A stretch of DNA of 64,000 nucleotides from Ascoidea asiatica JCM 7603 (taxonomy: Eukaryota; Fungi; Ascomycota): assembly GCA_001600695.1 (NCBI GenBank), contig BCKQ01000007.1, forward strand, positions 455,184 through 519,183. Reading direction: 5' to 3'. Below are positions 3,688 through 64,000 of the stretch, one piece after another (positions within the stretch are counted from its first letter, which is position 1; every line of letters starts with the position of its first letter). The translations under genes and the position numbers were made by a program. The notes below the pieces were generated by a model, which made no database searches, was not told the origin of the DNA, and saw nothing but the letters and a program-made list of their open reading frames with translations.

Positions 3688-4881
3688 TTAAATGAAAAAA
3701 TAAAAAATGGAAAAAACGAAAGATATTATGTAAAAATTTGAAATTTGGATATTTGAAGCAGCACTTGAAGAAGATGAAGTTGTAGACGAACTTGAAGAAG
3801 TAACTGAAGCTAATTTATTTGATTCAACAGTTTCTGAACTAATGACACTTTTAACAATTGAAGTTAAATCAGATGAAGAAATTGAAGAATTAGTTAAATC
3901 TAAATCATCTGAAATAAAAGTAAGAGTAGTTCCATTTGAATCAAATATAACACCACCTTTCATAGTTGCAGAAGTATTTCTTTCAATATAACCATAAACT
4001 CTTAAACCAGATTCAATATCATCAGTACCTTGATAATCATGAATTGAATTAAATAATTTAAGAGAATCAGTTGTATTTAAAATTTCAAAAATATCAAATT
4101 CTCCACAACCTGATCTCCAACATGAACAATTAGTTGATAAAGGATATTGAGAAGTTCTTGGAATTCTAGCATTTAATAACCAAATTGCAGGCATATTATA
4201 ATTAGTTGTATTTGAATCTGATTCATCATCCTCAGGCATTTGAAATTCGAATAAAAACATTTTTGTTGTACCATAAAAACCATAATAAGCAGGTATACCA
4301 TCTCTGTAAACACCACAATCTTTTTTTAAACCAGAATCTGGACATGAAACGTTTGAAAAAATTGCAAATTCTTCATCTGAAGGAATTAAAGTATCTTCAG
4401 ATAAAACTTTTGAGGTTTTTGAAAATGTTAATCCATCAGTATCAACATATGATAAAGCTTGGCCAAGACAATAAGAATCATCACCTTGATTACCCATGAA
4501 AGTTATATTATCTGCAGAAGAACCATCATAATAAGCAGATCTAGTCCAATCTTTATTATCTGAACCACCATAAACATAATTTTCAGAAGTATAAAAAGCG
4601 AATTTGTTTAAAATTGTTGGACCCCTGATATGAACAGATAATTCTTCATTTAAAGGAGAATTAGTTCCAGAGAATGAAACTGAATTATCAGATAAAGAAC
4701 AAGAACACGAATCTTCTGGGGTTCCATCAATTTTAGATACTTGATAATAAGTTCCTTCATAACCTAAATTTTCAAATTGTAAAACACCAGCTTGTTTTGA
4801 GGATGAAGAAGATTTAGATTTAGACTCGACTAAGGAGAATAATAATGGAATTAAGGATAGTGATATTAATTTTGAAAACAT
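3688..4881 (-). CDS. GPI-anchored GH16-like cell wall protein, Toh1(YJL171C)/Pga52/Tos1 family, copy 1
   Basis: Signal peptide; SPLNEELSVHIRGP, KMFLFEFQMP, MPAIWLLNARIPRTSQY, CSCWRSGCGEFDIFE; Ser/Thr tail and hydrophobic C-terminus. Confidence 0.88.
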   Translation of the reverse strand: MFSKLISLSLIPLLFSLVESKSKSSSSSKQAGVLQFENLGYEGTYYQVSKIDGTPEDSCSCSLSDNSVSFSGTNSPLNEELSVHIRGPTILNKFAFYTSENYVYGGSDNKDWTRSAYYDGSSADNITFMGNQGDDSYCLGQALSYVDTDGLTFSKTSKVLSEDTLIPSDEEFAIFSNVSCPDSGLKKDCGVYRDGIPAYYGFYGTTKMFLFEFQMPEDDESDSNTTNYNMPAIWLLNARIPRTSQYPLSTNCSCWRSGCGEFDIFEILNTTDSLKLFNSIHDYQGTDDIESGLRVYGYIERNTSATMKGGVIFDSNGTTLTFISDDLDLTNSSISSSDLTSIVKSVISSETVESNKLASVTSSSSSTTSSSSSAASNIQISNFYIISFVFSIFYFFI

Positions 4882-6299: not shown

Positions 6300-7523
6300 T
6301 TAAATAAAATTTAAAAAAAATATTAAAGCTAACATATTACCTATTATGAAGATTTTTGAAACTTGTTTAATGGAATAAGAAGCACCAGAACTGGATGAAG
6401 ATTCAGAATCAGAATCTGAAGAAGTTGAAGAAGATGAAGTAGTAGTAGTACTTGATACACTTGTTAATTCTTCGGTTTCAACATCATCTGAACTAATAAC
6501 ACTTTTAACAATTGTAGTTAGATCGGATGCAGAAATTGTTGAATTTAAATCTAAATCATCTGAAAGAAAAGTTATAGTTGTACCATCAGAACCAAAGATT
6601 ACACCACCTGTCATTGTTTTTGATGTTTGTCTTTTAATATAACCATAAACTTGTAAACCAGTTTCAATATATCCTGTACCTTGATAATCATGAATTGAAT
6701 TAAATAATTTTAAAGTTTCAGTTGTATTTAAAATTTCAAAAATATCAAATTCTCCACAACCACTTGTCCAACATGAACAATTTGATGATAATGGATATTG
6801 AGAAGTTCTTGGAATTCTTGCATTTAATAACCATATTGCTGGCATATCATAATTAGTTGCATCTGAACTTGTATTTGCTTCAGTTGGCATTGTAAATTCA
6901 AATAAAAACATTTTTGTTGTTCCATAAAATCCATGATATGCAGGTATATCATCTCTATAAACACCACAATCTTTTTTTAAACCAGAATCATCACAAGAAA
7001 TATTAGAATAAATCGCAAATTCTTCATCAGAAGCAATTAAAGTATCTTCTGCTAAAACTTTTGAAGTTTTTGAATATGTTAATCCATCAGTGCCAACATA
7101 AGATAATGCTTGTCCAAGACAATAAGAATCATCACCTTGATTACCCATGAAAGTTACATTATCAGCAGTACCCGAAGAACCATCATAATAAGCAGATCTT
7201 TCCCAATCTTCATTATCAGAACCATCATATTCATATTTTTCAGAAGTATAAAATGCAAATTTTTTTAAAATTGCAGGACCTCTAACATGTACAGAAAGTT
7301 CTTCATTTAAAGGAGAATTAGTACCTGAAAAACTAATTGCAGTATCATCTAAAGAACATGAACATGAATCCTCTGGAGTTCCATCTATTGCAGATACTTG
7401 ATAATAAGTTCCTTCAAAACCAAGATTTTCAAATTCTAAAACTCCTGCTCGACTACTATATTTTGATTCTACATTATGTATTAATAATGATATTAATGAT
7501 AAACTTATGTATTTTAAAAACAT
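6300..7523 (-). CDS. GPI-anchored GH16-like cell wall protein, Toh1/Pga52/Tos1 family, copy 2 (tandem paralog)
   Basis: Same motifs as 3688-4881 with long identical peptide stretches; signal peptide and GPI-type tail. Confidence 0.88.
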   Translation of the reverse strand: MFLKYISLSLISLLIHNVESKYSSRAGVLEFENLGFEGTYYQVSAIDGTPEDSCSCSLDDTAISFSGTNSPLNEELSVHVRGPAILKKFAFYTSEKYEYDGSDNEDWERSAYYDGSSGTADNVTFMGNQGDDSYCLGQALSYVGTDGLTYSKTSKVLAEDTLIASDEEFAIYSNISCDDSGLKKDCGVYRDDIPAYHGFYGTTKMFLFEFTMPTEANTSSDATNYDMPAIWLLNARIPRTSQYPLSSNCSCWTSGCGEFDIFEILNTTETLKLFNSIHDYQGTGYIETGLQVYGYIKRQTSKTMTGGVIFGSDGTTITFLSDDLDLNSTISASDLTTIVKSVISSDDVETEELTSVSSTTTTSSSSTSSDSDSESSSSSGASYSIKQVSKIFIIGNMLALIFFLNFI

Positions 7524-8876
7524 TTTAATAGATTTATTTTCAATTATTATTTTAATATTCTTCAGTAAAGTATGTTGAAAATATATTATGCTTTATTGAT
7601 TATTTAATGTAAAACTTTGTAAAACTATTTTTTATTATTGGAAATTAATATAATAATAATCAGTTGTTAAAATTGAAATAATATTCTTAATTGATAAAAA
7701 TATGGGAAGTTTTCAAAAAAAGAGTAAATAAAAGAATTGTCAAATAAAAAAGGGAATTGAATATATATATATATAAACCCTGCCTATATTTAAAGTATAT
7801 ACAGAATCTGTAATTTCAAGAAAAGATTAGCATTATTGTAGAAGAATATTCATTGATGTTTAATAATTCATCAGTTTCACCAAATATATATATTTTAAGC
7901 CATAATTTTGTTTTTTAAAAAGGCACAGTTAAAATGGAATTATTCTGTTAAAAAGGTATATTTCGATAAATTTGTTAGAAAAATGTATGATGGAAAAAGG
8001 AAATTTTCAATTGCCGGAACGCATATTCTTGCATGCCTTACACGATATTTAATGATTTTGTAACATTGAGTGCAAAAAAACAATCACACGAAACCAGTAA
8101 GCCAACTCGTAAGGCTATTTACAAGGCTAAGTAATTACAAAAACACTGGATTATTCAAACAGAATATTTAAAATTCTCAGTTAAAAATCAGAAAAATAAA
8201 GAAGGGAAATTAAAATGATTATGAAGACTCAAAAGACAGGGAGTGACTGGAGCTGAATTCCAGCGGTGTATCGATTTCGAAAAATACCGGTGAATCGCAA
8301 AGGCTGCGCTCAGTTGCCAAACACTGCTTGGTGAGGCCACGGGATTTGCCAGCAGCCATAAGCCTTTAAAAACAAATGCCGACTAGCCAATAATACGCGC
8401 TTTCAGAAAGCCTTTGCTGAGGCCCACTGTAGCGGAAACTCTGAAGGGGAATGAAAGCACAGATTCCCAAGAACAAGAAGCCGCAATGTAAACAAGCAGA
8501 AAACATTCTGAAAAAAATATCATCAATACTCTCGAATTTTTTAGTATCTTATTGAATATTTTGTGACGTTGGAGGACCTCATAGTATTTCTTGTGATAGG
8601 AAGTATTTAGTAGTGCCAAGGAATAATTTTGGCTAAGATTAAGCCATATAATTACTTTATGCGCGCAAAATGTATTACAGAAGGAAATGGTAAAGCGCGG
8701 GGCTGTATCCACAGCGATCCTGACCGGACCCGCGCTGTTTTGAAATTTCACTCTTTGCAACCCGCATATTCTCTGTCGTATACGATGTGTCTCCAAAAAC
8801 ATGCTCCTTTTCCGAAAAAAAACCATCTTTTCTTCGCTGAACTTCCAATAAAAGAAAATATAAAAAACAAGAACAA

Positions 8877-58891: not shown

Positions 58892-61073
58892 GACTTTAGA
58901 ATTTGAGTAAGTGAATTATTTATAATGATATAATTAAATAGATTGAATTATATAGGAAAATTGTTTAGTATTTATACTAATAGATAATTGAATAAAATAA
59001 TGTTATAATCAGATAATTTAACAATTAGCAGTTGTTTGAGTAGTTGAATATTTGAATATTTGAATTTGAAAAATTGAAAAATGGAAGTCAAAATAATATT
59101 ATTTTAGTTATTTTCAAAAATTAAATAAATTTTGATAAAAAAACAAGTAATAACCGATAAATTTATATTAAAAAATATTTTTTTTTTTGTTTGATTTGTT
59201 TTAGGTTAATTTATGAATATGATTTTTAGTATTCATAATTCCAAAGAACTAAATCGTATTAAAAACATAAATTATAGAGAAAATTTAAGAGGTGTAGAAA
59301 AAACTAAGTAAATTTTTGATGATTTTTTGAACATTTTTGAAAAAGAGATATTTTCATTTGACTTGAAATAAAAAATAAAAAAAAAGAGTTTTTGAACTAT
59401 AATTGTTTGAAATTACTTTTTATTTTTTTCTTTATATGTTTAAACTTAACGTTGTCTGATTATACTGAACTTAAGAGAAATACTTTTAATGAGCAATGAT
59501 TTGAGGTTATTGAAAATGTTGGTGATTATGAAGAAGAATAAGAAGATGAAGAAGATTTAAAAAGTGTTTGAAATGAATATCACGATGATGGAAATATGTG
59601 TACTTTTAAACGAAGACTTATACATTATTTGGATTATTGAATAGTTTGTTTGAGTACAATTATATGAGTTTTCTGCAATATTCTGTCTTGTCATAATTGA
59701 ATCATATTATTATTATGCAAAGAAGATTTTTTTTTTTTGTTTGTTTGAAATAATATTTTATTTAATGTGAAATGTAAAATAATTAAGATAATTTTGTAAG
59801 TTCATAATGACATAAATTGATGGATTCATAATTTCATAATGTCATGAATTGCTAATTTCACCATCCTTGATTTGAGCAATCGTTTTGGAAAGTTGAAAGT
59901 TTTTATTTAAGTTGTTTTTAATTATAATTCAATTAAAGGTTATTGAATATATGAAGAGAAAGTATAATTCAATATAGAATTTCAGAGATAAAATATTATT
60001 TACTTTTATTTTGGAGTTGATTATTGGTAATAATCAAATATAAATGGTGATAAAAGAAGATGATTAAAGATGATTCAACAACATTGGAAACTTACTTTTT
60101 CATCTTTTCAATAACAGAAGTTCAAATTTAAATAAAACTTTGCTGTATTTTAGGAAAAAGAAGATGGAATAACGTTAGTTAGATAACTGTCTTAAAAGAA
60201 GAGTTTCTTCCCAAAGTTTCCAAAAATCAAGAGAAAATTCAAAAAGAAAAAAAAAAATCCCCTCAGATAAAAAGAGAAATACAAAGAAAAGAAAAGAAAC
60301 GACAAAAAAAAACGACAAAAAAAAAGGGCATATGCCAATATTATATTAATATTAGTATTAGTGGCATATACGACATAGTTCTGGAATTAGAACTCCCAGA
60401 CGCAGGAACAAAGCTCTTCCTGCAGTTGGATTACAATTTTGCGGAGTGTCCCGTGAGGACCCAAACTATGCACACTACACTGCAGTACTGTACTTTATTT
60501 GTGGTGGAGTTACAACAAAAATAGTGTTACTATGGCGATTAGACCTAAAACCTCGGAGATAACGAGATTCATGTTGTTGCCAGTAACAACTGATTAACAA
60601 CTAGCGAAAAATCTAAACAACTTATCAGAAACACAAAGAAAAACAGAATTTATGGTATTTGAGTGGTATTTGAAAACAGGTTGTATTCGGCGGTATCATT
60701 TTAACTAGTGAAAGGTTTATGCTTCACGTGCAAACAAAATCGCGTCCCTGAAAAAAAAGGAAATTATATTAACGTTACATCATTTTTAGAGGATCCGAAC
60801 AGTTTAGAAAGCTGGAGCAAATATATCAGACTAAAAAACAAAAATATTAAGCTATCGTTAAAAATTTCCCTAGTTTTTTTAGATTAAGATTTGAAACTTT
60901 AAACCAAGTAGACCTTACAAAAGCGGAAAGAAAATTTTACCGAATTATTTAAATATAGGTTCCATGAGATTGGCTTTTGATTGGCTAGAGCTCAAAAAAT
61001 GTCCTAAATGAATGGATTTTTCAGAGATTGAATAGAAATATATAGGTTAATAATTAAATAAAAACAATTGAAA

Positions 61074-61145
61074 TCCGTGATAGTTTAGTGGCTAGAATTA
61101 CCGCTTGTCGCGTGGTAGACCGGGGTTCAATTCCCCGTCGCGGAG
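61074..61145 (+). tRNA. tRNA-Asp(GUC), canonical
   Basis: TCCGTGATAGTTTAGTGG...ACCGC-TTGTCGC-GTGGT...GGTTCAATTCCCCGTCGCGGAG + T-run. Confidence 0.96.
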
Positions 61146-63021
61146 TTTATTTTTTTTTTTAGTTTTTTAGAATTTTAGTTTATTAGTTTCTTTCTTTTAT
61201 TGTTGTTTTGAGAGATAGAAGATATCTAAGGTTTTTAAATAGCTTCAATAAGCTCGATTTATTATCGAGTTAAAATAAAGAAAAGCAATTTTAGTTTCTA
61301 AATATAAAATGTAAAACATAAAATATTAATATACAAACTAGATAGTAATAATTGTAGTTTAGTAAATATTGAGTATTTTAAAAAAAAAAGTACAAAATAC
61401 AATAATAATTGCAGCAAGAACAATAAGCTTTCAAATTCTCAAAAGTGTAATAACAAATTGAGAAATGATTTATTTCTTCTTGAATCAATCGAAAAATTCC
61501 AAACAAATAAAATTTTAATTATTAAATTCTAAACATTAAATAGATTAAAGAATTACTTCTAGAATGTGGATATAAAGGGATGAAAAGTATTTGCTATATG
61601 GTTATAGAACTCAATATTGGCTGCTAAATTAGAATATTCGAATATATTTATATAAAGATAAACTATTCAAGTGGTTATCTATTTACTTATTATCAATCCA
61701 AGAAATGAATTCTTAACTATGTAAAATAAGTGCGCTACTTAAATTCTAGAATGTCGGGCTATGGTTCCGTAAATAAATTACGAGCCATGCTTCTTGGTGC
61801 CTTTCTTTCCGCAGCAAAGCTTAATTCCCTTGTATTGCCCCAACTTCACCAGAGTATACCGCTATTGCGTTGGCGAAGTTTTCATAATTGCGCCGACATT
61901 ACGCCGCTATTCCTCGTTGAACAACTTCAGATATTGCGTTTCGGATTATGCGCTTCACAAAATGAGTTTCAGGAAATGCGCGGTGCGTGAATCGCCCCAG
62001 GGCTGTGGTTTTGCATTGGTGAAAATAGCAGACTGCAGCTACCTGTGGCTGTAGATTTGGTGCTGTGCCCAGTGCTGCGTAGAATCTGCAGCTTGGCCTG
62101 GCTCTCTGTACACGATTGTCTATTTGGTCTCGAGGCCTGTCCATTTGGTTCAGTTTGTGAAAGTTGTTCAGGGTGTATTCCCATAGTTAAAGGCTGTTAC
62201 TTCCACAGAGCGAGTACAAATCCGTGGACAGCCCCTCTTTGTTGGCTCTCCTTTGCCCAATTCGTAATTTGAAGAAGCGTTTTAAGCCAGACGAACTTAA
62301 GATCTCTTACAATCTTATTCAGTCTCTTGTTCCTCACTCTTTTCCCATTTCTTCATTTATCCAGTGTCTATTCAAACAATGCTTTATTTCAATTGACCAT
62401 TGAATAAATAAATAAAGAATAAAGAATAAAGAATAATAACAAATTGGAGAAATTAGAAAAAGACAGGAAGAATAATATTCTAATTGAAAAAGAAACCCAT
62501 TATGATTAAATATACATTATTCCTATTAACTTATTATTTTCTCCTTTTTCAAAAAATTCGTAGTCTAGTTTTTTACAGTCTGCAATTTTGAAGTAAATTA
62601 CGAGCATGAAATTTGCAAAATTTATGAAATAACCAATACTTTTACTATGAAAAAAAGAATGCTATGAAAATAATACAAAGTTATCGTGTCGCAGCTGGCA
62701 TGCAAATATATTACAAAATAATTCACTCTGAACTAAATTTAACTTTTATAATAATTATTTCCCAGTATTTTGTAAAGAATACTACTGTACTAACTGATAC
62801 TTGATTTGAAATAAGACCTCCTACGGATAATTAATCCATAATATTTTATAGCAATAATTATTCTAATCTAATGAATCTTTTCAGATTTTTTGTATAAATT
62901 CATTGAATTCTTCCTTTTTTTTAAAAAAAGATTTATTTTCCTTTATTATTCTCAAATTTGAATCAAATCATTCATTACATATCATTATTTAATAAACTTA
63001 TTAATACAAACAATATCAATA

Positions 63022-64000
63022 ATGTCTTTCAATAATAATTCAGATAATTGTAAGTATTACATTCAATTTCAAATTCCAATTTCAATCCCAATTTTTACTT
63101 CAATAACTAACAGTCGTTTAATAGTCGAATATGATTTAGAAATCATTCAACAACCTGAAAAGGGTAGAATGAGTGGGTTGGGTGATAAAGATAGAAGATA
63201 TATATCTCCACCTCCATGTATTAAATTAAATGTTAAAGATAAATTTTCAAAAAAAAATATTCCAATAAATCAATTTTCGAACAAATATTTTTTTATTTGT
63301 ATTGTTACTTTATATGATCCTGAATCAATGAAAGATTTAACAATTATTAATTCAATTCCTCAAAATAAAAGAAAAAGAAAAAATTTAAATAAAAATTTAA
63401 AATCTAATTTAAAAAAAAATTCAGTTTCAAGATCAAGTATATCTTCTTCAAATAGTATATTTAGTATAAATGATAATGATAATAATAATATTACTCCAAG
63501 AAGTAGTATTTCTTCAAATGATGATGATATTGATAACTTTAACTGTAATAATAACAATAGTAATGGCCTAAATACATTAATATATGATAATAATAATGAA
63601 GAAATGGATTCTAAAAATGGTCCAATAAGGAATCTTAATGGTGAAATTATAAAAAATGGTGTAATTTTAGAGGATATAAAAAAACAACAAGGAATTTGGT
63701 TTATTTTTCCTGAATTAACAATTAGAATCCAAGGTACTTTTAAATTAAAATTTACTTTATTTAAAATTGAAAATATTGAAAAATTTTTAAGTCAATCATT
63801 AAATAATAATCTTAATATTAATACAATTCAATCAATTTGTGAAACATATTCAAATAATTTTAAAATTTTTATACCAAAAGAATTTCCTGGAGTTTCTAAA
63901 AGTACTGAATTAAGTAAATGTTTTGCAAATCAAGGAATTAAAATTCCAATAAGAAATTCAGAAAGAAAAAATTCAATATCTTCAAAAAAAAGAAAACTAA
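63022..64000 (+). CDS. velB: Velvet-family regulator, VelB-like; intron 63050-63124; runs off the window end
   Basis: Manual translation: EYDLEIIQQPEKGRMSGLGDKDRRYISPPPCIKLNVKD ... RNLNG ... GIWFIFPELTIRIQGTFKLKFTL ... FPGVSKSTELSKCFANQGIKIPIR; intron GTAAGT...ACTAAC...TAG. Confidence 0.9.
   Translation, partial: MSFNNNSDNCKYYIQFQIPISIPIFTSITNSRLIVEYDLEIIQQPEKGRMSGLGDKDRRYISPPPCIKLNVKDKFSKKNIPINQFSNKYFFICIVTLYDPESMKDLTIINSIPQNKRKRKNLNKNLKSNLKKNSVSRSSISSSNSIFSINDNDNNNITPRSSISSNDDDIDNFNCNNNNSNGLNTLIYDNNNEEMDSKNGPIRNLNGEIIKNGVILEDIKKQQGIWFIFPELTIRIQGTFKLKFTLFKIENIEKFLSQSLNNNLNINTIQSICETYSNNFKIFIPKEFPGVSKSTELSKCFANQGIKIPIRNSERKNSISSKKRKL

What the first reader, a model, noticed from the sequence alone, without database searches (positions are those of the whole stretch)
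63022..64000. VelB-type velvet regulator in a budding-yeast genome (not in the ORF track)
Seen: an open frame from ATG 63022 to the window edge carries both halves of a velvet domain (QQP..GRMSGLGDKDRR.ISPPPCIKL and GIWF...FPGV..STELSKCFANQGIKIPIR), split by a ~95-aa Asn/Ser-rich insert. Known: this split layout and these motifs are those of VelB. Velvet proteins (NF-kB-like fold) control development, spore maturation and secondary metabolism in filamentous fungi and are absent from S. cerevisiae, C. albicans and S. pombe. The neighbours (FET4, AMN1, MTF1, PSD2) are Saccharomycotina-type and the AT-rich codon usage looks native. Inference: this yeast retains a velvet-based developmental circuit, possibly reduced, perhaps linked to true hyphal growth or sporulation.
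Basis: partly seen in the sequence, partly recalled or inferred. Interest (0 to 1): 0.85.

Follow-up and report, generated by a model that had tools for sequence, protein, structure and literature searches.

The report
VelB-class velvet gene in Ascoidea-like yeast
This is a real, intact velvet-family (VelB-type) transcription-factor gene in a very AT-rich filamentous budding yeast, but it is one of about 19 velvet-like genes in that genome and such genes are already on record for this yeast group, so it is a sound but ordinary find.

Summary
The frame from ATG 63022 is a full velvet domain (Pfam PF11754, E 4e-58). It is interrupted by a ~93-aa Asn/Ser-rich insert at the same place as the 99-aa insert of Aspergillus nidulans VelB. 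The gene ends 191 bases past the window edge, inside an 868-kb contig. It probably has a 75-nt in-frame 5' intron. Sequence, fold and tree all place it in the VelB class.

The genome's closest relative in the databases is Ascoidea rubescens, so it is probably an Ascoidea-type filamentous yeast. The velvet set is expanded, not reduced. There are six VelB-class paralogues, VeA-like and VosA-like genes, and about 19 velvet-like loci in all.

This is not new in kind:
- Twelve velvet genes were reported for Saccharomycopsis fibuligera in 2016.
- A 2024 survey defined Saccharomycotina VeA, VelB, VelC and VosA clades.
- The A. rubescens relative is already annotated as a velvet factor.

I found no functional study of a velvet gene in any budding yeast. 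No RNA data exist for this organism. Earlier notes of this scan flagged other velvet genes of the same genome on other DNA, but not this one.

The parts
63022..63049 (+). Exon 1: ATG plus 9 codons and 1 base (MSFNNNSDN + T)
   Evidence: Sequence read directly. Paralogue L005 and A. rubescens ASCRUDRAFT_74661 have the same short-exon layout.
63050..63124 (+). Probable 75-nt phase-1 intron (GTAAGT ... AACTAAC ... TAG). It is in frame and free of stops, so the unspliced frame is also open.
   Evidence: Splice signals read. An intron sits at the same position, one codon before [D/E]Y[E/D]L, in L005 and in the annotated A. rubescens gene (L015:10017-10102). No RNA data were available to confirm it.
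63125..64000 (+). Exon 2, which continues 191 bases beyond the window to the stop at window-equivalent 64191 (G000:C7:519374)
   Evidence: L003:1393-2562 is a 389-aa ORF; window-to-contig mapping.
63130..63348 (+). N-terminal half of the velvet domain (residues 37-109 of the unspliced ORF). It includes DNA-binding loop A (GLGDKDRRY).
   Evidence: Pfam. The alignment to VelB and VosA pairs query K56, R58 and R59 with VosA K39, R41 and K42. AF2 pLDDT above 90.
63349..63627 (+). Asn/Ser/Lys-rich insert of about 93 aa (residues 110-202) that interrupts the velvet domain. It contains a KRKRK run.
   Evidence: Gap in the alignment to VelB, corresponding to VelB 131-235. AF2 pLDDT 41-57 with no secondary structure. 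Basic run found.
63628..63969 (+). C-terminal half of the velvet domain (residues 203-316)
   Evidence: Pfam. VelB alignment at 74 bits. AF2 pLDDT above 90 over most of the half, with one lower block (71-85) in a loop. 56% identity to A. rubescens 74661 over this stretch.
63985..63996 (+). KKRK run just after the domain, a possible nuclear localisation signal. It is followed, outside the window, by a disordered tail ending in DDCLDFLNFD.
   Evidence: The KKRK run and an [DE]FLNFD motif are shared with the A. rubescens 74661 tail. The roles as NLS and activation motif are inferred only.
61730..62300 (.). GC-rich island (40-51% GC) 0.7-1.3 kb upstream of the ATG, probably part of the promoter region
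   Evidence: Single copy in the genome, no Rfam match, and no excess fold stability. The A. rubescens relative has a comparable island upstream.

Best explanation
This is a native, intact gene for a VelB-class velvet-domain transcription factor, 364 aa spliced or 389 aa unspliced. The host is a roughly 25% GC, 20.3-Mb budding-yeast genome whose nearest database relative is Ascoidea rubescens. Shown here: the two halves of the domain fold into the NF-kB-like velvet beta-sandwich, around a disordered Asn/Ser-rich loop inserted where A. nidulans VelB has its 99-aa insertion. Three of the four basic loop-A residues needed for DNA binding in VosA are kept; the fourth is Gly, as in VelB. The gene belongs to a four-member subclade with A. 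rubescens 74661 and two paralogues of this genome, inside a set of six VelB-class paralogues and about 19 velvet-like loci. Inferred: the protein binds DNA as a homodimer or as a heterodimer with another velvet protein, either a VeA-like or VosA-like paralogue or another VelB-like one. It enters the nucleus through its own KKRK/KRKRK runs. It regulates a developmental programme such as hyphal, conidial or ascus and spore maturation, as velvet proteins do in filamentous fungi.
For: Pfam Velvet at E 4.2e-58 over the full profile. PDB sequence search ranks VelB 2.1e-36, VosA 3.6e-19 and VeA 4.8e-13, with the insert at the VelB position (Ahmed 2013, PMC3876986, gives VelB residues 132-231). The AF2 model has pLDDT above 90 for both halves and below 50 for the insert and tail. 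Foldseek's best match is the VelB chain 4n6r_B at E 1.5e-18 and TM 0.82 normalised to the target. An exhaustive HMMER search gives A. rubescens 74661 at 8e-62 as the top hit. Named relatives include Lipomyces, Limtongia and Dipodascopsis velvet proteins, Colletotrichum 'Velvet complex subunit B' and Exophiala RYP3. In the trees, the query clade has support 100/100. All six VelB-like paralogues group with named VelB/RYP3 and are split from this genome's VeA-like and VosA-like genes with SH-aLRT support of 99. The query matches the consensus in 48 of the 56 strongly conserved alignment columns that apply to it; the 57th is the start Met, which the exon-2 reference lacks. The intron position is conserved. 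Composition is native and there is no CTG codon. Two separate studies' read sets hold the stretch completely. Complex prediction with the VeA-like paralogue gave weak support: ipSAE 0.46 against a best control of 0.17, at least 35% of contacts shared between runs, partner pLDDT at least 54. That mark was reached by 51 of 78 solved complexes and 2 of 108 mismatched pairs, but passes at 0.60 or below are more often wrong than right, and a like complex is already solved.
Against: The otherwise invariant Cys of the ARMCG motif is Ser here, and seven other conserved positions differ. The trees contain no Pezizomycotina VeA, VosA or VelC reference rows, because named references could not be fetched; the outgroup is this genome's own VeA-like and VosA-like paralogues, classed only by their best PDB hit. 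With six VelB-class paralogues, the gene is a co-orthologue of VelB, not its one-to-one orthologue. Synteny (CK2beta next to the velvet gene) points to paralogue L005, not this gene, as the positional counterpart of A. rubescens 74661. The partner, the targets and the biological role are all inferred. The presence of LaeA was not tested, and a 2026 review says LaeA is absent from Saccharomycotina (PMC13006574).
Confidence: 0.85

Rival explanations
1. It is a neofunctionalised VelB-class duplicate that works on its own. It would act as a homodimeric activator, using its own nuclear localisation signals and an acidic-hydrophobic C-terminal motif, independent of any VeA/LaeA-type complex.
For: KRKRK and KKRK runs, and a C-terminal [DE]FLNFD motif conserved with A. 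rubescens 74661. Six VelB-class paralogues make subfunctionalisation likely. It branches first within its subclade and has no syntenic partner in the A. rubescens locus examined. LaeA is reported absent from Saccharomycotina (PMC13006574).
Against: The motif functions are guesses from sequence alone. VeA-like and VosA-like partners do exist in the genome. The one heteromer tested in silico got weak rather than no support.
Confidence: 0.3
2. It is a decaying or silent paralogue, a relic copy that is no longer used.
For: The family is large and some divergent members carry in-frame stops (C20:140428 and C11:563256). The query has a long terminal branch and Asn-rich composition. No expression data exist.
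Against: The open frame is complete at 389 codons and the splice signals are intact. The Pfam match is full length at 198 bits. The query matches the consensus in 48 of the 56 conserved columns that apply to it, as well as or better than its sister paralogues. The fold is predicted with confidence.
Confidence: 0.07
3. It is a contaminant, a misassembly or a recent horizontal transfer from a filamentous fungus.
Against: The window edge is not a contig edge: the gene lies at 518 kb of an 868-kb contig. Its GC of 20% and GC3 of 8% match the neighbours. Its closest relatives are velvet genes of A. rubescens and its own paralogues. It has yeast-type intron signals at a position conserved in those relatives. 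The stretch is held completely in runs of two separate studies.
Confidence: 0.02

Closest known systems
Aspergillus nidulans VelB (velvet complex subunit B; PDB 4n6r chain B)
   Same: It is the best sequence match among solved structures (E 2.1e-36) and the best structural match (TM 0.82). The velvet domain is interrupted by a disordered insert of about 90-100 aa at the same site. Loop A reads G-DKDRR and the C-terminal motif FANQGIKIPIR is identical. Overall size is similar, 364-389 aa against 369 aa.
   Different: The insert is Asn/Ser/Lys-rich rather than Pro/Gln/Gly/Tyr/Ser-rich. ARMCG has become GRMSG. This protein has KKRK-type basic runs and an acidic FLNFD tail. It is one of six VelB-class paralogues rather than a single-copy gene. 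Whether it pairs with VeA-like or VosA-like proteins, and whether LaeA exists here, is unknown.
Ascoidea rubescens DSM 1968 ASCRUDRAFT_74661 (annotated 'velvet factor family protein', 367 aa)
   Same: It is the closest relative anywhere: E 8e-62, 46-47% identity overall and 56% over the C-terminal half. It shares the phase-1 intron position, the KKRK run and the [DE]FLNFD tail motif. It also has a GC-rich island upstream.
   Different: No genes are shared within 10 kb either side. Its CK2beta neighbour maps next to paralogue L005 in this genome, so the relation is co-orthology, not a clean one-to-one pair.
Velvet gene expansion in Saccharomycopsis fibuligera (12 genes; Choo et al. 2016, PMC5106798) and the Sac-Tap-VelB clade of the 2024 survey (PMC10845976)
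   Same: This is the same phenomenon, a multi-copy velvet family dominated by VelB-like and VeA-like members. It occurs in yeasts that papers treat as close relatives (the Ascoidea and Saccharomycopsis genera; PMC8629427).
   Different: No S. fibuligera sequences could be fetched here, so shared ancestry of the duplications was not tested. This genome appears to carry more loci, about 19 when very divergent short ones are counted.
Histoplasma Ryp3 and other Pezizomycotina VelB orthologues (Vel2, VE-2)
   Same: An Exophiala protein named RYP3 and a Colletotrichum 'Velvet complex subunit B' fall in the same VelB-class side of the tree.
   Different: Identity is only 28-40%. Their roles in yeast-phase growth, conidiation and secondary metabolism cannot be transferred without experiments.

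Membership tests
Velvet family (Pfam PF11754) | Match to the Velvet profile above the curated cut-off and over its full length | tested here: met
   E 4.2e-58, 197.6 bits against a cut-off of 25, profile positions 1-236 of 237. The six-frame genome search gave the same result.
Velvet family (Pfam PF11754) | NF-kB/Rel-N-like beta-sandwich fold as in VosA and VelB | tested here: met
   AF2 model of exon 2 with a 50-row alignment: pLDDT above 90 for both halves. Foldseek against the PDB gives 4n6r_B at 1.5e-18, 4n6q at 2.1e-13 and 9i2s at 4.5e-08, with nothing else below 0.2.
Velvet family (Pfam PF11754) | Basic loop-A residues needed for DNA binding (VosA K37, K39, R41, K42; Ahmed 2013) | tested here: met
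   The alignment pairs K56, R58 and R59 with VosA K39, R41 and K42. The K37 position is Gly, as in VelB itself. DNA binding itself was not tested.
VelB class | Closer to VelB than to VosA, VeA or VelC | tested here: met
   PDB phmmer gives VelB 128.9 bits, VosA 72.3 and VeA 52.2. The query groups with named VelB/RYP3, apart from this genome's VeA-like and VosA-like genes (support 99). Caveat: no VelC and no Pezizomycotina VeA or VosA rows were in the tree.
VelB class | Velvet domain interrupted by a long disordered insertion between the two halves | tested here: met
   The insert at residues 110-202 aligns with the VelB gap at 131-235 (VelB insertion 132-231 per PMC3876986). It is predicted to be disordered.
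VelB class | One-to-one orthology with VelB | tested here: not met
   There are six VelB-class paralogues in the genome. The query sits in a four-member subclade whose internal order is unresolved (80/77). It is a co-orthologue.
Velvet complex (VelB-VeA-LaeA, or VelB-VosA) | Physical pairing with a VeA-type or VosA-type velvet protein | tested here: inconclusive
   VeA-like (L007, L009) and VosA-like (L010) genes exist. The predicted complex with L007 gave weak support, 0.46 against a best control of 0.17, and a like complex is already solved so the pass may come from memory.
Velvet complex (VelB-VeA-LaeA, or VelB-VosA) | Presence of a LaeA methyltransferase partner | not tested
   No LaeA reference sequence could be obtained. 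A 2026 review states LaeA is absent from Saccharomycotina (PMC13006574), but the same review also wrongly states that velvet proteins are absent there.

The most novel reading that the evidence does not exclude
The Ascoidea and Saccharomycopsis lineage may have rebuilt the velvet system into a large, LaeA-free network of about 19 loci, six of them VelB-class. In that network, VelB-type duplicates such as this one would have gained their own nuclear import signals and an acidic FLNFD activation motif. They would act as stand-alone regulators of the hyphal, conidial or ascus programme that sets these filamentous yeasts apart from ordinary budding yeasts.
Probability: 0.25. Interest if true: 0.55.

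Novelty: new member of a known kind. Interest (0 to 1): 0.28.

Why it matters
Velvet proteins are master regulators of development and secondary metabolism in moulds. Reviews as recent as 2026 (PMC13006574) still describe them as absent from budding yeasts. This gene is a clean example that some filamentous budding yeasts keep the family and even expand it. The value lies in the family rather than in this single gene. I found no paper in which a velvet gene of a budding yeast has been knocked out. This lineage, with true hyphae and a small genome, could show what velvet proteins do outside moulds and without the classic VeA-LaeA setting. The distribution itself is already published, so the present gene adds one annotated member and a gene model.

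Tried and rejected
1. Word-indexed protein searches were nearly blind here. Asn-rich low-complexity words swamped the candidate lists: 9 hits for the whole protein, 3 for the C-terminal half and none for the neighbouring RRN3. As a result I could not fetch named VeA, VosA or VelC references, nor confirm the organism with a housekeeping gene.

2. RNA evidence was not obtainable. 

3. Microsynteny with the A. rubescens locus of 74661 is absent: no shared genes within 10 kb either side. The CK2beta neighbour maps beside paralogue L005 instead.

4. I considered that the upstream GC-rich island might be an RNA gene or a repeat, and rejected both. It has no Rfam hit, fold z-scores of only -1.0 and -0.8, a single copy in the genome, and no blastn similarity to the A. 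rubescens island. Similar islands lie upstream of many genes.

5. Complex prediction with the VeA-like paralogue gave only weak support: 0.46 against a best control of 0.17. Passes at or below 0.60 are more often wrong than right. It does not identify the partner.

6. The supplements of the 2024 velvet survey hold no text hit for Ascoidea, Saccharomycopsis or Lipomyces, so I could not see whether this species was in that survey.

7. Spliced model. Searches and the fold used exon 2 by reference only (L003:1498-2559). The joined exon 1 plus exon 2 protein was sent to no search or fold tool. In one local tree script the query row carried the 10-residue spliced N-terminus. The tree built from the unspliced ORF gave the same placement.

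Full report
**Observation**

Pfam's Velvet model (PF11754) matches residues 37-313 over profile positions 1-236 of 237. The E-value is 4.2e-58 and the score 197.6 bits, against a curated cut-off of 25. The window is G000:C7:455184-519183. The frame continues past the window to a stop at window-equivalent 64191, giving 389 codons (L003:1393-2562). Contig C7 is 867,818 bases long. The gene was missing from an ORF list only because it runs off the window, not because it sits at a contig end.

**Gene model**

Nine codons after the ATG there is a GTAAGT at 63050, then an AACTAAC branch site, then a TAG ending at 63124. This 75-nt stretch is in frame and has no stop, so the unspliced frame also reads through.

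The same layout is seen in two relatives:
- In paralogue L005, splicing is needed to supply a start codon (ATG 1385, GTAAGT, TACTAAC, TAG).
- The A. rubescens gene ASCRUDRAFT_74661 has an annotated intron at L015:10017-10102.

In all three, exon 2 begins one codon before [D/E]Y[E/D]L. I therefore take the intron as real, which gives 364 aa. No RNA data could confirm it.

**Class**

Against the sequences of solved structures, A. nidulans VelB scores 2.1e-36, VosA 3.6e-19 and VeA 4.8e-13. The alignment pairs query 37-109 with VelB 59-130 and query 203-316 with VelB 236-350. The unaligned 93 residues therefore sit where VelB has its 99-residue insertion (residues 132-231; Ahmed et al. 2013, PMC3876986). 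That paper shows that VosA K37, K39, R41 and K42 in loop A are needed for DNA binding. In one search the query's K56, R58 and R59 align with K39, R41 and K42. The K37 position is Gly, as in VelB.

An AlphaFold2 model of exon 2 with a 50-row alignment has pLDDT above 90 for both domain halves. It falls below 50 for most of the insert and the C-terminal tail. Foldseek against the PDB returns only velvet structures below E 0.001: VelB chain 4n6r_B at 1.5e-18 (TM 0.82 by target), then VosA, then VeA.

**Relatives**

An exhaustive HMMER search of 1.84 billion representatives finds 2,257 proteins at E up to 0.001, but only 13 at E up to 1e-30. The top hit is A. rubescens ASCRUDRAFT_74661 at 8e-62 and 46% identity. 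The next hit drops to 4e-36.

Named hits include:
- a second A. rubescens velvet protein;
- velvet proteins of Dipodascopsis, Limtongia and Lipomyces;
- Colletotrichum 'Velvet complex subunit B' and Exophiala RYP3.

**The family in this genome**

The genome is 20.3 Mb in 71 contigs, and the window is about 25% GC. A six-frame search with PF11754 finds ten strong loci and four weaker ones. By motif and by best PDB hit:
- L001 to L006 are VelB-like.
- L007 and L009 are closest to VeA.
- L010 is closest to VosA.

A profile built from the divergent members adds five more short loci, four of them on contig C20. Two of the five (C20:140428 and C11:563256) carry an in-frame stop. The total is about 19 velvet-like loci.

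In a 52-row maximum-likelihood tree, all six VelB-like paralogues group with named VelB/RYP3 proteins. They are split from this genome's VeA-like and VosA-like genes with SH-aLRT support of 99. The query forms a clade with A. rubescens 74661, L004 (C12) and L005 (C4:419k). Support is 100 in the quick tree and 100/100 in a careful 18-row tree. Inside that clade the order is weak (80/77).

Synteny and tail motifs point in different directions:
- The A. rubescens CK2beta gene that flanks 74661 has its best match (81% identity) at C4:417606-418310, right beside L005. L005 is therefore the positional counterpart.
- The query and 74661 share a KKRK run and an [DE]FLNFD motif in their tails, which L005 lacks.

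I read the query, L005 and L004 as co-orthologues of 74661.

**Is it native?**

The gene has 20% GC, 8% GC3 and no CTG codon. Four neighbouring genes have GC3 of 8-16%. Pfam identifies the window's genes as ordinary fungal genes:
- FET4-like iron permease and AMN1-like LRR protein;
- two Tos1-like cell-wall proteins;
- MPM1, Vps26 and an amino-acid permease;
- MTF1-like, TSC11/RICTOR, a bZIP factor, PSD2 and RRN3.

The stretch is held completely by read sets from two separate studies of one organism. Contamination or recent transfer is very unlikely. I infer an Ascoidea-type lineage from three points. The best velvet hits are from A. rubescens. CK2beta and a RabGAP protein are 81% and 73% identical to A. 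rubescens. The intron position is shared. A housekeeping-gene search that could have confirmed the lineage returned nothing.

**How it probably works**

Shown here: an intact velvet DNA-binding fold of VelB type, with conserved loop-A basic residues and a disordered insert.

Inferred from the family (Ahmed 2013): it binds DNA as a dimer, either with itself or with another velvet protein.

One in-silico test paired residues 30-325 of the query with residues 15-315 of the VeA-like L007. It gave weak support: ipSAE 0.46 against a best control of 0.17, at least 35% of contacts shared between runs, and partner pLDDT at least 54. That mark was reached by 51 of 78 solved complexes and 2 of 108 mismatched pairs. 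Passes at 0.60 or below are more often wrong than right, and because a like complex is already solved the pass may reflect memory. It does not pick the partner.

The KRKRK and KKRK runs and the acidic FLNFD tail suggest nuclear import and activation functions. That rests on sequence alone. The biological role in hyphal, conidial or spore development is an extrapolation from filamentous fungi.

**What is already known**

- Choo et al. 2016 (PMC5106798) reported 12 velvet-domain genes in Saccharomycopsis fibuligera as a notable expansion.
- The 2024 kingdom-wide survey (PMC10845976) found velvet genes in part of the Saccharomycotina. [quoted passage not shown]
- The A. rubescens relative is annotated as a velvet factor in NCBI.
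- A 2026 review still states that velvet proteins and LaeA are absent from Saccharomycotina (PMC13006574). The belief persists, but it has been corrected in print.
- I found no functional study of a velvet gene in any budding yeast.

**Limits and compliance**

- The joined spliced protein was not sent to any search or fold tool; exon 2 was used by reference. One local tree script used the spliced N-terminus for the query row, and the unspliced row gave the same placement.
- The tree lacks Pezizomycotina VeA, VosA and VelC references, because named ones could not be fetched.
- LaeA was not tested.

**Verdict**

The idea of a 'reduced relic circuit' is wrong, because the family is expanded. The kind of finding is already published. 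It is a new member of a known kind, of modest interest.

Noticed in passing
window 61730-62300: A 570-bp island of 40-51% GC lies in ~20% GC intergenic DNA, 0.7-1.3 kb upstream of the velvet ATG. It is single copy, has no Rfam match, and folds no better than shuffled sequence. The A. rubescens relative has a 54% GC island at L015:8250-8750, 1.3-1.8 kb upstream of its velvet gene, with no detectable sequence similarity. Short GC-rich bins also lie upstream of most other velvet paralogues and of unrelated genes. It is probably a promoter feature of this genome.
   Followed up: partly
window 61074-61145 (+): A tRNA-Asp (GTC) gene lies inside the 4-kb ORF-free gap (58892-63021) between a 195-aa ORF with no Pfam match and the velvet gene.
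   Followed up: yes
window 60330-60760: A second patch of raised GC (35-42%) lies upstream of the tRNA-Asp gene, with no ORF of 100 aa or more and no Rfam match. It is unexplained.
   Followed up: no
L006 = G000:C1:656573-658771: This VelB-like paralogue has a velvet domain split by an insert of about 380 aa (domain halves at residues 5-193 and 577-789 of the open frame). That is far longer than the VelB-type insert.
   Followed up: no
G000:C20:140428-207741 and C11:563256-563708: A loose array of short (about 200 aa), very divergent velvet-like genes lies on contig C20 (140k, 174k, 198k, 202k, 207k), with one more on C11. Two of them (C20:140428, C11:563256) have an in-frame stop, which could mean a pseudogene or an intron.
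   Followed up: partly
G000:C4:417606-420424 (L020, L005) and L015:1918-11190: The CK2beta and velvet gene neighbourhood is conserved between A. rubescens and paralogue L005 on C4. Four VelB-like paralogues lie on C4 between 419 kb and 488 kb, with a VeA-like one at 559 kb.
   Followed up: partly
L003:2332-2559 (beyond the window) and P0001 tail: The C-terminal tail motif [DE]FLNFD, preceded by a KKRK run, is conserved between this gene and A. rubescens 74661 but is absent from paralogue L005. It may be an activation or partner-binding motif.
   Followed up: no
window 3688-4881 and 6300-7523 (-): Two Tos1/YJL171C-type cell-wall protein genes lie in tandem, with GC-rich bins at 8201-8800 upstream of the second.
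   Followed up: no
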